Positions 5,101 through 7,442 of a DNA stretch of 64,000 nt are shown here, piece by piece. Each line of letters opens with the position of its first letter. The first letter of the stretch is position 1. Position numbers and translations under genes: made by a program. Below the pieces are notes generated by a model. The model was given only the letters and a program-made list of their open reading frames with translations, was not told where the DNA came from and did no database searches. This DNA comes from Ophelia neglecta (Eukaryota), in the NCBI GenBank assembly GCA_965285935.1, contig OZ260661.1:61752001-61816000 (forward strand), written 5' to 3'.

Positions 5101-6178
5101 ATTTTCATACCTGTTTAATGACAGATGCGCCACTTATTTTGGACAAAAGACAACTGAAGAAAACGTAAAGAAGTAACATGTGACTTTCTTTTGAGGCAGT
5201 AAACCCTTAACCTTTTCGTTTGAGTCCATTGCTCGCTGTCCTAGTTCAACTTAGATAGGCTCAAGGTTTAATGCCGTCAAACCGTCCAAATAAAGCGATC
5301 TAGTGGGCTATTGTAGAATAACACGGGATGTTATTTGATATTGCATAACAGTGGATGACCAAAATGTATAATTATAACGTCAACAGAAGGAGTTTAATAT
5401 ATCGGAGAAAATAAACAGCATGATATAGTAGGATACAGCCAAGTAAACCTTGTTTCATATTATGGGAAATTTGTGTGACATATATAGCGTTAGGGATATA
5501 ATAGGCTATACCACAATCATGAAGGCTTGTTGGTAAATTACTACTTTTTTCATGCTGGTAATCACATATATGCTGCAGTGCCCCCTCCCAACGTTGTCGT
5601 CGTAGTATTTAGTTTGATTTAATATATATGTACAAGTGATTTCCTTATTAAACTAGATCATCTGAAGAAATTATATTCATTTTAGATACTAGCATACATT
5701 AAATAACAAGTTGTTTACGAACGTATACTTAATGATATTACTTTAATACTTAAATTTTAGTAGGAGTTAATCCCTGGACATTTTTTATATTAATGTAGAT
5801 GTGTAGGTTTTTTATTTATTGGTTACAGTATAAATCGGGTTCAAATTTGATTAATTGAGGCGAAAATGGTTAATCCAATAACAGATCCATGTATCATGTT
5901 TTCAGTCTAAACAGGTCATCGCGGACAGACCGAAAGCTCATCTCCAGAAATTGAAAACACCTTTCTAAGAAACTTTCCCAGTATACGTTATAAATTTGAT
6001 TCATGTATGGGCTATAAATTATCTACATTAGACAACTTAAAAGCGGCCTAGCTTTAACTGACTTCACAATTGGTTGTATATTAAATTAGGAAGTGTCTTA
6101 ATCAGGTTTTATTTCATTGAATTCAGCAGTTATAATTTATTCGTACCCTGCAATCCCTACCCTGCTTGTTGTTGCAGA

Positions 6179-6376
6179 ATGAGGATGGTGTTGATGCTGT
6201 TATTGGGCGTCCTGGTTGTGCTGCTCGAGCTCCTACCCCAGTGTGACACTCAACTGACCCAAAGCCTAGGCTGGGGAAGCGCCGGCTCCCCCGGAAAACG
6301 ATCCACAGGCTACCTGTCTCATGACGACTGTCGTGTCAGCTCTGAAGCCTTCCAGAACCTTCTAATTCTTCTTGAG
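6179..6376 (+). CDS. GnRH/AKH/ACP-superfamily neuropeptide precursor, coding exon 1 (signal peptide, mature peptide, GKR, start of associated peptide)
   Basis: Acceptor TTGTTGTTGCAG ends at 6177; ATG at 6179. 24-aa hydrophobic signal MRMVLMLLLGVLVVLLELLPQCDT is followed directly by QLTQSLGWGSAGSP (6251-6292) and G-K-R (amidation plus dibasic cleavage). Donor GAG|GTAGG at 6377, phase 0. Confidence 0.9.
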
Positions 6377-7155
6377 GTAGGCTATTTTACAGCCGATATG
6401 AAAGATCGCCTACCATTAAAATTTATGATACCGGGGCCCAAAACGATCAAACTGACGCAGGTATATACACAGGAAATAATCCTATCCATGAATGCACGTA
6501 AACTTGGTAGGTGTTTCCAAAAGAAGGTGAACATTATTTTCAGTCCGACATATCTGCAAATTCGCTAAGGGCAGATACCGTATCCTTCATGGCGAGCCGC
6601 AATATTTTAGCCTAATTACAATTAATCGCCAAATTTTTCACTGCTTTGCGCGTAATTTTGAAGAATTACGTTCTTGTCTTTCGATAGCCATATTGTAGCA
6701 TGTGATTTTGCTTAAAGAAGTATAAGGTCCACCTGTTCCGTCTGAAAAGGAAAGAGACGGTTTCAATTGACAAAATTTTGAGACAAGAAAAAAATTGGTT
6801 GTGGGTGGGGGTGGGAGGGGCGGAGTTTTTTTTGACTTTTTTTTCGGCAAAATATCCAATACTCATGCAATTTTAAGTGTTTTAAGCGAAAATAATTTAT
6901 TTTTGGTAGGAATTAGTTTTATTTGCACTTGGTATATTCCGACAAAATATGCAATTTCCAGCGTTTTGTGTGCATAAATATTTTGTGGCTGTCTTTGGGG
7001 GGGGGGGGGGGGGGATCCCACCTTTGCATTGACTTTGTCACAAGCGATTGTTCGACGTACATATTCACTTTCCATTTCCATGGGAGACTTGCATTTCTAA
7101 GCGCAATGTTTATACAGTCGATCTCTAGTAAATTACATGTTTTGTTTCTCTACAG

Positions 7156-7188
7156 CGTGAAGCCTCGAGATTAAGGTCATGTCGATAG
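7156..7188 (+). CDS. neuropeptide precursor, coding exon 2 (REASRLRSCR*)
   Basis: Acceptor TTTGTTTCTCTACAG ends at 7155, phase 0. The spliced tail DDCRVSSEAFQNLLILLE-REASRLRSCR* has two Cys and an L..LL..EA.RL..C helix like AKH/ACP precursor-related peptides. Total precursor 76 aa. Confidence 0.85.
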   Translation, partial: REASRLRSCR

Positions 7189-7436: not shown

Positions 7437-7442
7437 AATAAA
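7437..7442 (+). promoter_or_regulatory. candidate polyadenylation signal of the neuropeptide gene
   Basis: AATAAA about 250 nt after the stop, with GT/T-rich sequence (CAGTGTTGTACTTATTTTTGT) downstream. Confidence 0.45.

What the first reader, a model, noticed from the sequence alone, without database searches (positions are those of the whole stretch)
6179..7188. Atypical AKH/GnRH-type neuropeptide: pQLTQSLGWGSAGSP-amide lacks the position-4 aromatic and is 14 residues long
Seen: signal peptide followed directly by Q-L-T-Q-S-L-G-W-G-S-A-G-S-P-G-K-R, and a spliced two-Cys tail (C...FQNLLILLE/REASRLRSC). Established: the AKH consensus is pQ-[LVI]-[NT]-[FY]-[ST]-x-x-W-(G-x)-amide at 8-10 residues, with aromatic 4 and Trp8 important for receptor activation. 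This peptide fits positions 1, 2, 3, 5, 8 and 9 but has Gln4 and a 14-residue length. Inference: a divergent ligand class in the GnRH/AKH/ACP family, perhaps with its own receptor. The ORF track hides it inside a 164-aa ORF, so automated annotation could miss it. Similar GnRH-like paralogues may already be reported from annelids or brachiopods; I cannot check this.
Basis: partly seen in the sequence, partly recalled or inferred. Interest (0 to 1): 0.8.

Follow-up and report, generated by a model that had tools for sequence, protein, structure and literature searches.

The report
Known annelid GnRH2-type neuropeptide gene
This is a real, intact two-exon gene for a small brain hormone precursor, but the hormone was already described in other marine worms and its receptors are known in one of them, so it is an ordinary orthologue.

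Summary
Window 6179-6376 and 7156-7188 (+) encode a 76-residue precursor: a signal peptide, then QLTQSLGWGSAGSP with a GKR site, then a two-Cys tail split by a phase-0 GT-AG intron.

It is a real gene under strong constraint. Eleven other contigs or proteins carry the same 17 residues after unrelated signal peptides. Across 10 DNA loci, 19 of the 51 coding bases vary and none changes an amino acid. The donor and the small second exon ([RKE]EAxRLxxC directly after an acceptor) recur in four other species' loci.

It is not new.
- **Capitella teleta:** Li et al. 2016 list a "proto-AKH" with the identical peptide.
- **Platynereis:** Its peptide pQLTQSLGWGSAGSSamide (AKH2, renamed GnRH2/GnRHL4) differs only in the last residue. 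It is the only ligand tested that activates the two GnRH/AKH-type receptors (Andreatta et al. 2019).
- **Wider spread:** Thiel et al. 2021 describe this long-tailed "GnRH type 2" in annelids, nemerteans, brachiopods and phoronids.

One small extra: a GnRH type-1-like gene (QFSFSLPGQWGGG) lies about 20 kb upstream on the same strand.

No RNA run was available, so splicing rests on comparison alone.

The parts
6013..6019 (+). Possible TATA box (TATAAAT). A second copy lies at 5989-5995.
   Evidence: Read. There is no ATG between 6013 and the start codon at 6179. This is inference only; no transcript data exist.
6179..6250 (+). Start codon and signal peptide, residues 1-24, ending ..QCDT.
   Evidence: It has a hydrophobic core. 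The residue at -1 is small (T, A, S or G) in all 9 aligned homologues, and conservation begins exactly at the next residue.
6251..6292 (+). The 14-residue peptide QLTQSLGWGSAGSP, predicted to mature as the pyroGlu, C-terminally amidated form.
   Evidence: It is invariant in 12 independent sequences. It is identical to Capitella proto-AKH and 13/14 identical to Platynereis GnRH2/GnRHL4.
6293..6301 (+). G-K-R: the amide-donor Gly plus a dibasic convertase site.
   Evidence: Invariant in all homologues.
6302..6376 (+). First part of the associated peptide, holding Cys51 and ending ..NLLILLE.
   Evidence: The helix-like ..L..[ILM].L[IL][QE] segment and the first Cys are shared with homologues.
6377..7155 (+). 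Phase-0 intron of 779 nt, GT...AG, containing a long poly-G run near 7000.
   Evidence: A phase-0 GT donor lies at the homologous position in all ten DNA loci. It is G|GT in L007 and the window and CAG|GT in the other eight, as seen.
7156..7188 (+). Terminal coding exon REASRLRSCR plus stop, carrying the second Cys.
   Evidence: The matching exons KEAKRLRSC, KEAMRLMKC, KEARRLRNC and EEAKRLKGC sit directly after an acceptor in L001, L002, L029 and L030. The motif occurred in 0 of 2000 shuffles of 10 kb.
7437..7442 (+). First AATAAA after the stop; likely polyadenylation signal.
   Evidence: Inference only.

Best explanation
This is the orthologue, in an annelid genome, of the spiralian GnRH type 2 neuropeptide precursor. 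Published names are Capitella proto-AKH and Platynereis AKH2, proto-AKH-2 or GnRH2/GnRHL4.

**Shown here**
- An intact two-coding-exon gene.
- A peptide block that is invariant across species and under purifying selection.
- A conserved phase-0 intron and a conserved second exon.

**Inferred from the known processing of this family**
- The signal peptide is removed before Q25.
- A prohormone convertase cuts after K40-R41, and carboxypeptidase trims the basic residues.
- Gly39 is converted to a C-terminal amide, and Gln25 cyclises to pyroglutamate.
- The product is pQLTQSLGWGSAGSP-amide, calculated [M+H]+ 1370.67.
- The two-Cys tail is a co-released associated peptide.

**Inferred from the Platynereis orthologue**
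- The peptide is made in a few brain neurons.
- It signals through the canonical GnRH/AKH-type rhodopsin-beta GPCRs, of which Platynereis has two.
For: - **Gene anatomy:**
- **Copy number:** single copy in the 762-Mb assembly.
- **Homologues:** 8 database homologues and 3 further contigs carry the identical peptide plus GKR. The invariant columns are exactly Q25-R41.
- **Selection:** 19 of 51 bases vary among 10 loci with no amino-acid change.
- **Splice sites:** the donor is conserved, and the exon-2 motif sits directly after an acceptor in 5 loci, with none in 2000 shuffles.
- **Capitella and Platynereis:** Li et al. 2016 Suppl. Fig. S4 gives Capitella proto-AKH with the identical peptide and a tail ..MLE/REISRL... 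It also gives the transcript-derived Platynereis proto-AKH-2, whose tail ..LIQ/REVVRQRYC.. matches the junction proposed here.
- **Receptors:** Andreatta et al. 2019 Table S1 and Fig. S3 report that pQLTQSLGWGSAGSSa alone activates GnRHR1/AKHR1 and GnRHR2/AKHR2.
- **Wider family:** Thiel et al. 2021 define the type with an extended C-terminus in four spiralian phyla.
- **Shared intron:** the annelid proto-AKH genes share the common AKH/corazonin intron organisation, whose conserved AKH intron is phase 0.
- **Repertoire in this genome:** the other GnRH-superfamily genes in this genome match the annelid repertoire.
Against: - No RNA run holds the locus, so expression and the splice junction are supported only by comparison.
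- Signal-peptide cleavage, pyroGlu formation and amidation are predicted, not measured.
- Exon 2 was not found within 10 kb downstream in two related contigs, L026 and L027.
- The receptor pairing is taken from another species. The receptor genes of this genome were not examined here.
Confidence: 0.93

Rival explanations
1. One reading: a divergent ligand class that in this species acts through a dedicated, still unknown receptor rather than the canonical GnRH/AKH-type receptors.
For: Gln replaces the aromatic residue at position 4 and the C-terminus is extended. Thiel et al. note unresolved ligand-receptor matching among annelid GnRH-like peptides and a possible further receptor.
Against: In Platynereis the 13/14-identical peptide is the only one of four ligands that activates both canonical GnRH/AKH-type receptors. 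The open question about a missing receptor concerns the type-1 peptide, GnRHL3, not this one.
Confidence: 0.05
2. The gene is not spliced as modelled. The product is the read-through ORF, or uses another 3' exon, so there is no second Cys.
For: There are no transcript data. The read-through frame stays open to 6568. The published Capitella model ends without a second Cys.
Against: A phase-0 GT donor is kept at the homologous position in all ten loci. The [RKE]EAxRLxxC exon sits directly after an acceptor in five loci and is not expected by chance. The sequences after the donor are unrelated between species. The Platynereis cDNA-derived tail has the same junction.
Confidence: 0.03
3. A silent relic or chance ORF that is no longer expressed in this species.
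For: No RNA holder was found.
Against: The frame, splice sites and processing sites are intact, and the gene is single-copy. All differences from other species within the peptide block are synonymous. The absence of RNA runs reflects missing data for this organism.
Confidence: 0.02

Closest known systems
Capitella teleta proto-AKH (Li et al. 2016, Sci Rep 6:32789, Suppl. Fig. S4; WGS AMQN01001098.1)
   Same: The mature peptide plus GKR is identical (QLTQSLGWGSAGSPGKR) and follows the signal peptide directly. The tail is similar across the junction (..MLE/REISRL.. against ..LLE/REASRL..). The genomic organisation is the same as in AKH and corazonin genes.
   Different: The signal peptide and the linker are unrelated in sequence. 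The published Capitella model ends without the second Cys that this gene has.
Platynereis dumerilii AKH2, also called proto-AKH-2 or GnRH2/GnRHL4 (Conzelmann et al. 2013; Andreatta et al. 2019; KF515936.1)
   Same: 13 of 14 residues match, including Gln4, Trp8 and the extended GSAGS tail. It has a two-Cys tail with ..LIQ/RE..R..C. It is functionally characterised: it activates GnRHR1/AKHR1 and GnRHR2/AKHR2, is expressed in brain cell clusters and is up-regulated at maturity.
   Different: The last residue is Ser instead of Pro. Its linker between peptide and tail is much longer and acidic.
Spiralian GnRH type 2 of brachiopods, phoronids and a nemertean (Thiel et al. 2021; Lingula proto-AKH in Li et al. 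2016)
   Same: It has the same architecture and an extended C-terminus. The Lingula peptide QWHQTLGWGAAGMV shares Q1, Q4, L6, G7, W8, G9, A11 and G12.
   Different: Only about 8 of 14 residues are shared. The annelid form is far more uniform.
True AKHs of arthropods and molluscs, and annelid GnRH type 1 (pQFSFSLPGKWGNamide)
   Same: They share the pQ start, an aliphatic or aromatic residue at position 2, a Ser or Thr at position 5 (in the AKHs), Trp followed by Gly, an amidated end, a single copy after the signal peptide, a Cys-containing tail and the shared intron.
   Different: True AKHs are 8-10 residues long with F or Y at position 4 and a W, WG or WGX amide end. This peptide has Gln4 and 14 residues, so it fails three of the six AKH hallmarks.

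Membership tests
GnRH/AKH/corazonin superfamily precursor | A single bioactive peptide directly after the signal peptide, beginning with Gln | tested here: met
   Conservation starts exactly at Q25, after a small residue at -1 in all homologues.
GnRH/AKH/corazonin superfamily precursor | Gly plus a dibasic site right after the peptide (amidation and cleavage) | tested here: met
   GKR at residues 39-41, invariant in 12 sequences.
GnRH/AKH/corazonin superfamily precursor | A Cys-containing associated peptide, with the shared phase-0 intron in the coding region | tested here: met
   Cys51 and Cys75 flank a phase-0 intron. The family feature is as described by Li et al..
Spiralian GnRH type 2 (Platynereis GnRH2/GnRHL4, Capitella proto-AKH) | Peptide with a Q-x-x-Q-[ST]-L-G-W-G core and an extended C-terminus, 14 residues long | tested here: met
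   14/14 identical to Capitella and 13/14 to Platynereis. The extended C-terminus is as defined by Thiel et al..
Spiralian GnRH type 2 (Platynereis GnRH2/GnRHL4, Capitella proto-AKH) | Activates GnRH/AKH-type receptors | not testable with these tools
   Shown only for Platynereis. An earlier unverified note, s1-750833, reports an AKH-type receptor elsewhere in this genome.
True AKH (hallmarks of Li et al. 2016) | Length of 8-10 residues | tested here: not met
   14 residues (hallmarks).
True AKH (hallmarks of Li et al. 2016) | FS, FT or YS at positions 4-5 | tested here: not met
   QS at positions 4-5.
True AKH (hallmarks of Li et al. 2016) | pQ1, aliphatic or aromatic residue at position 2, Trp at position 8 | tested here: met
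   Q1, L2 and W8. With 3 of 6 hallmarks and a length above 10, it falls in their proto-AKH class.
True AKH (hallmarks of Li et al. 2016) | C-terminus is W-amide, WG-amide or WGX-amide | tested here: not met
   The end is WGSAGSP-amide.
Corazonin type (spiralian pQ.YHFS.GW.P-amide) | H-F-S-x-G-W-x-P core | tested here: not met
   The core is absent here. A separate CRZ2-type gene with that core exists at C1:106.56 Mb.

The most novel reading that the evidence does not exclude
The GnRH type 2 gene and a GnRH type-1-like gene lie 19.9 kb apart in the same orientation on contig C1. The type-1-like gene predicts pQFSFSLPGQWGGG-amide and starts at C1:61738200. If this pair is a surviving tandem duplicate, it would be direct genomic evidence for the type 1 / type 2 duplication that Thiel et al. 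2021 inferred only from presence and absence of peptides. I found no paper that mentions such linkage, but I did not search for it specifically. I could not show the linkage in any second species.
Probability: 0.3. Interest if true: 0.3.

Novelty: already known. Interest (0 to 1): 0.12.

Why it matters
The finding adds little. It gives one more annelid orthologue of a published and partly characterised neuropeptide, with a clean exon model that annotators can use, since ORF callers read through the intron.

The complete identity of the 14-residue peptide across many divergent annelid sequences underlines how tightly the ligand is constrained, even though it lacks the aromatic residue that arthropod AKH receptors need.

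The only possibly new point is the tandem position next to a type-1-like paralogue, which bears on how the spiralian GnRH expansion arose.

Tried and rejected
- **Pfam:** a scan of exon 1 found no family. This is expected for so short a peptide.
- **RNA evidence:** only three holders from one study were found, none on record as RNA, and all also hold the intron. Read laying was therefore not used, because contigs of genomic DNA cannot show a splice.
- **Full-text search:** searching for the peptide string found nothing relevant. The sequence sits only in supplementary files, which were reached through a topic search.
- **Corazonin-1 pattern:** Q.YHFS.GW gave one hit with an in-frame stop, no better than the control. 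A CRZ1-type gene was therefore not located.
- **HFS.GW.PG pattern:** besides the CRZ2-type gene, it hit a tandem HFCGGWCPG repeat on C8 that is unrelated.
- **Exon 2 in related contigs:** it was not found within 10 kb downstream in L026 or L027, by motif or by blastn. L027 carries a retrotransposon there.
- **Linkage in other species:** no type-1 paralogue lies within the flanks held (about 6-10 kb upstream and 10 kb downstream) of the type-2 gene in L001, L026, L027 or L030. Conservation of the linkage is untested.
- **Not run:**
  - The search of protein representatives, the second and third word searches, structure prediction and complex prediction, because the protein was no longer open.
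  - The exons were handled separately by reference.
  - A search for the receptor genes of this genome, because no receptor query was available by reference.

Full report
**1. The observation**

- An ATG at 6179 opens 66 codons, MRMV...ILLE, ending at 6376.
- A GT follows at 6377-6378.
- A pyrimidine tract and AG end at 7155.
- Bases 7156-7188 read REASRLRSCR then stop.

The joined model has 76 residues:
- a hydrophobic signal peptide, residues 1-24;
- QLTQSLGWGSAGSP, residues 25-38;
- GKR, residues 39-41;
- a tail with Cys51 and Cys75.

The mechanical ORF list shows only a 164-aa ORF, 6074-6568, that starts upstream and reads into the intron. A TATAAAT lies at 6013-6019, with no ATG between it and 6179. 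The first AATAAA after the stop is at 7437. Both are inferences only.

**2. It is real and constrained**

A word search with exon 1 by reference gave 8 unnamed proteins of 71-92 residues from metagenome assemblies. A scan of metagenome contigs gave 3 more loci. All carry exactly QLTQSLGWGSAGSPGKR. Their signal peptides and tails are only about 40-47% identical to the window's. In the alignment, the invariant columns are exactly Q25 to R41.

At the DNA level, 10 loci differ pairwise at 2-15 of these 51 bases. Nineteen sites vary: 15 at third positions, and the rest from synonymous Leu, Arg and Ser codon switches. No amino acid changes. The residue before Q is T, A, S or G in every sequence, and conservation starts at Q. 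This is the comparative signature of signal-peptide cleavage at that point.

The gene is single-copy in the 762-Mb assembly, at C1:61758179.

**3. The splice model**

No run on record as RNA holds the locus, so I tested the model by comparison.
- Every locus has a phase-0 GT donor at the position homologous to 6377. It is G|GT in L007 and the window and CAG|GT in the other eight.
- After the donor, the read-through sequences are unrelated between species.
- A short terminal exon follows directly after a pyrimidine tract and AG in five loci:

| Locus | Position | Exon 2 begins |
|---|---|---|
| window | 7156 | REASRLRSC |
| L001 | 13936 | KEAKRLRSC |
| L002 | 2266 | KEAMRLMKC |
| L029 | 2677 | KEARRLRNC |
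| L030 | 11444 | EEAKRLKGC |

- The strict motif never arose in 2000 shuffles of 10 kb.
- Two related contigs, L026 and L027, show no such exon within 10 kb. One of them has a retrotransposon there. Three contigs are too short to tell.
- The transcript-derived Platynereis precursor has the same junction..LIQ/REVVRQRYC.

The exons were used separately by reference.

**4. What it is**

Li et al. 2016 (PMC5024129) list in Supplementary Fig. S4:
- a Capitella teleta proto-AKH with the identical peptide and a tail ..MLE/REISRL..;
- a Platynereis proto-AKH-2 with QLTQSLGWGSAGSS;
- a Lingula proto-AKH, QWHQTLGWGAAGMV.

Their text defines six AKH hallmarks and calls longer peptides with 2-4 of them proto-AKHs. 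This peptide meets three: pQ1, L2 and W8. It fails three: length, FS/FT/YS at positions 4-5, and the form of the C-terminus. They also state that the annelid proto-AKH genes share the common AKH/corazonin intron organisation, whose conserved AKH intron is phase 0.

Andreatta et al. 2019 (PMC6969523) Table S1 equates pQLTQSLGWGSAGSSa with AKH2 of Conzelmann et al. 2013 and renames it GnRH2/GnRHL4. In their assays it is the only one of four GnRH-like peptides that activates GnRHR1/AKHR1 and GnRHR2/AKHR2. It is expressed in a deep brain cluster and near the anterior eyes, and is up-regulated in mature worms.

Thiel et al. [quoted passage not shown] They infer a duplication in the trochozoan ancestor.

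**5. How it most likely works**

These steps are inferred from the family's known processing:
- cleavage before Q25;
- convertase cleavage after KR;
- amidation from Gly39;
- pyroGlu formation at Q25.

The predicted product is pQLTQSLGWGSAGSP-amide, [M+H]+ 1370.67. From Platynereis, it should signal through canonical GnRH/AKH-type GPCRs. An earlier unverified note reports an AKH-type receptor elsewhere in this genome; I did not test it.

**6. Context in this genome**

Degenerate pattern searches found three further genes:
- a two-copy QFSFSLPGKWG gene on C2, with the same layout as Capitella GnRH-2;
- a CRZ2-type gene, QHVHFSTGWAPGFGV, on C1:106.56 Mb;
- a single-copy QFSFSLPGQWGGG gene at C1:61738200-61738410 on the + strand, with a likely exon 2 at C1:61739359.

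The last gene lies 19.9 kb upstream of the gene studied here, in the same orientation. Only a few unexamined open stretches of 130-190 codons lie between them.

This repertoire matches Platynereis and Capitella.

**7. Verdict**

The family assignment is right. The novelty is removed by the published identical (Capitella) and 13/14-identical, deorphanised (Platynereis) peptides.

The tandem position beside a type-1-like paralogue is the only item I could not find in the papers read. It is untested in other species.

Noticed in passing
L010:1429-1638 (+), which is G000:C1:61738200-61738409; likely exon 2 at C1:61739359. About 13.6 kb before the window start.: A GnRH type-1-like precursor. It has a signal peptide ending ..SASG, then QFSFSLPGQWGGG plus GKR, one Cys, and ..LYLLIK before a GT donor. 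The candidate exon 2 reads GEALRSLDDC.. . It lies 19.9 kb upstream of the type-2 gene on the same strand, so the two may be tandem duplicates.
   Followed up: partly
L008:1426-1719 (+), which is G000:C2 at about 72302105; exon 2 candidate at L008:2680.: A two-copy GnRH type-1 precursor, QFSFSLPGKWGN-GKR then PFSFSLPGKWGS-GKR, with the same layout as the published Capitella GnRH-2. The exon 2 candidate reads EEAMRISEC.. .
   Followed up: partly
L014:1326-1652 (-), which is G000:C1 at about 106562436.: A corazonin-2-type precursor, QHVHFSTGWAPGFGV plus GKR after the signal peptide. It is close to Platynereis CRZ2, pQHAHFSTGWTPGFGLa. No CRZ1-type gene was located with the patterns tried.
   Followed up: partly
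G000:C8:82203309-82206257 (+), loci L015-L025.: Eleven near-identical copies of a motif encoding HFCGGWCPG within 3 kb. This is a tandem Cys-rich repeat unrelated to GnRH peptides.
   Followed up: no
window 6790-6830 and 6997-7015.: G-rich tracts inside the intron, including a run of about 19 G. They are likely simple sequence and a possible source of assembly or length variation.
   Followed up: no
L027:8190-12295 (+).: An LTR-type retrotransposon (RVT_1, RNase H, integrase) is inserted downstream of exon 1 of the orthologue in another species' contig, possibly inside its intron.
   Followed up: no
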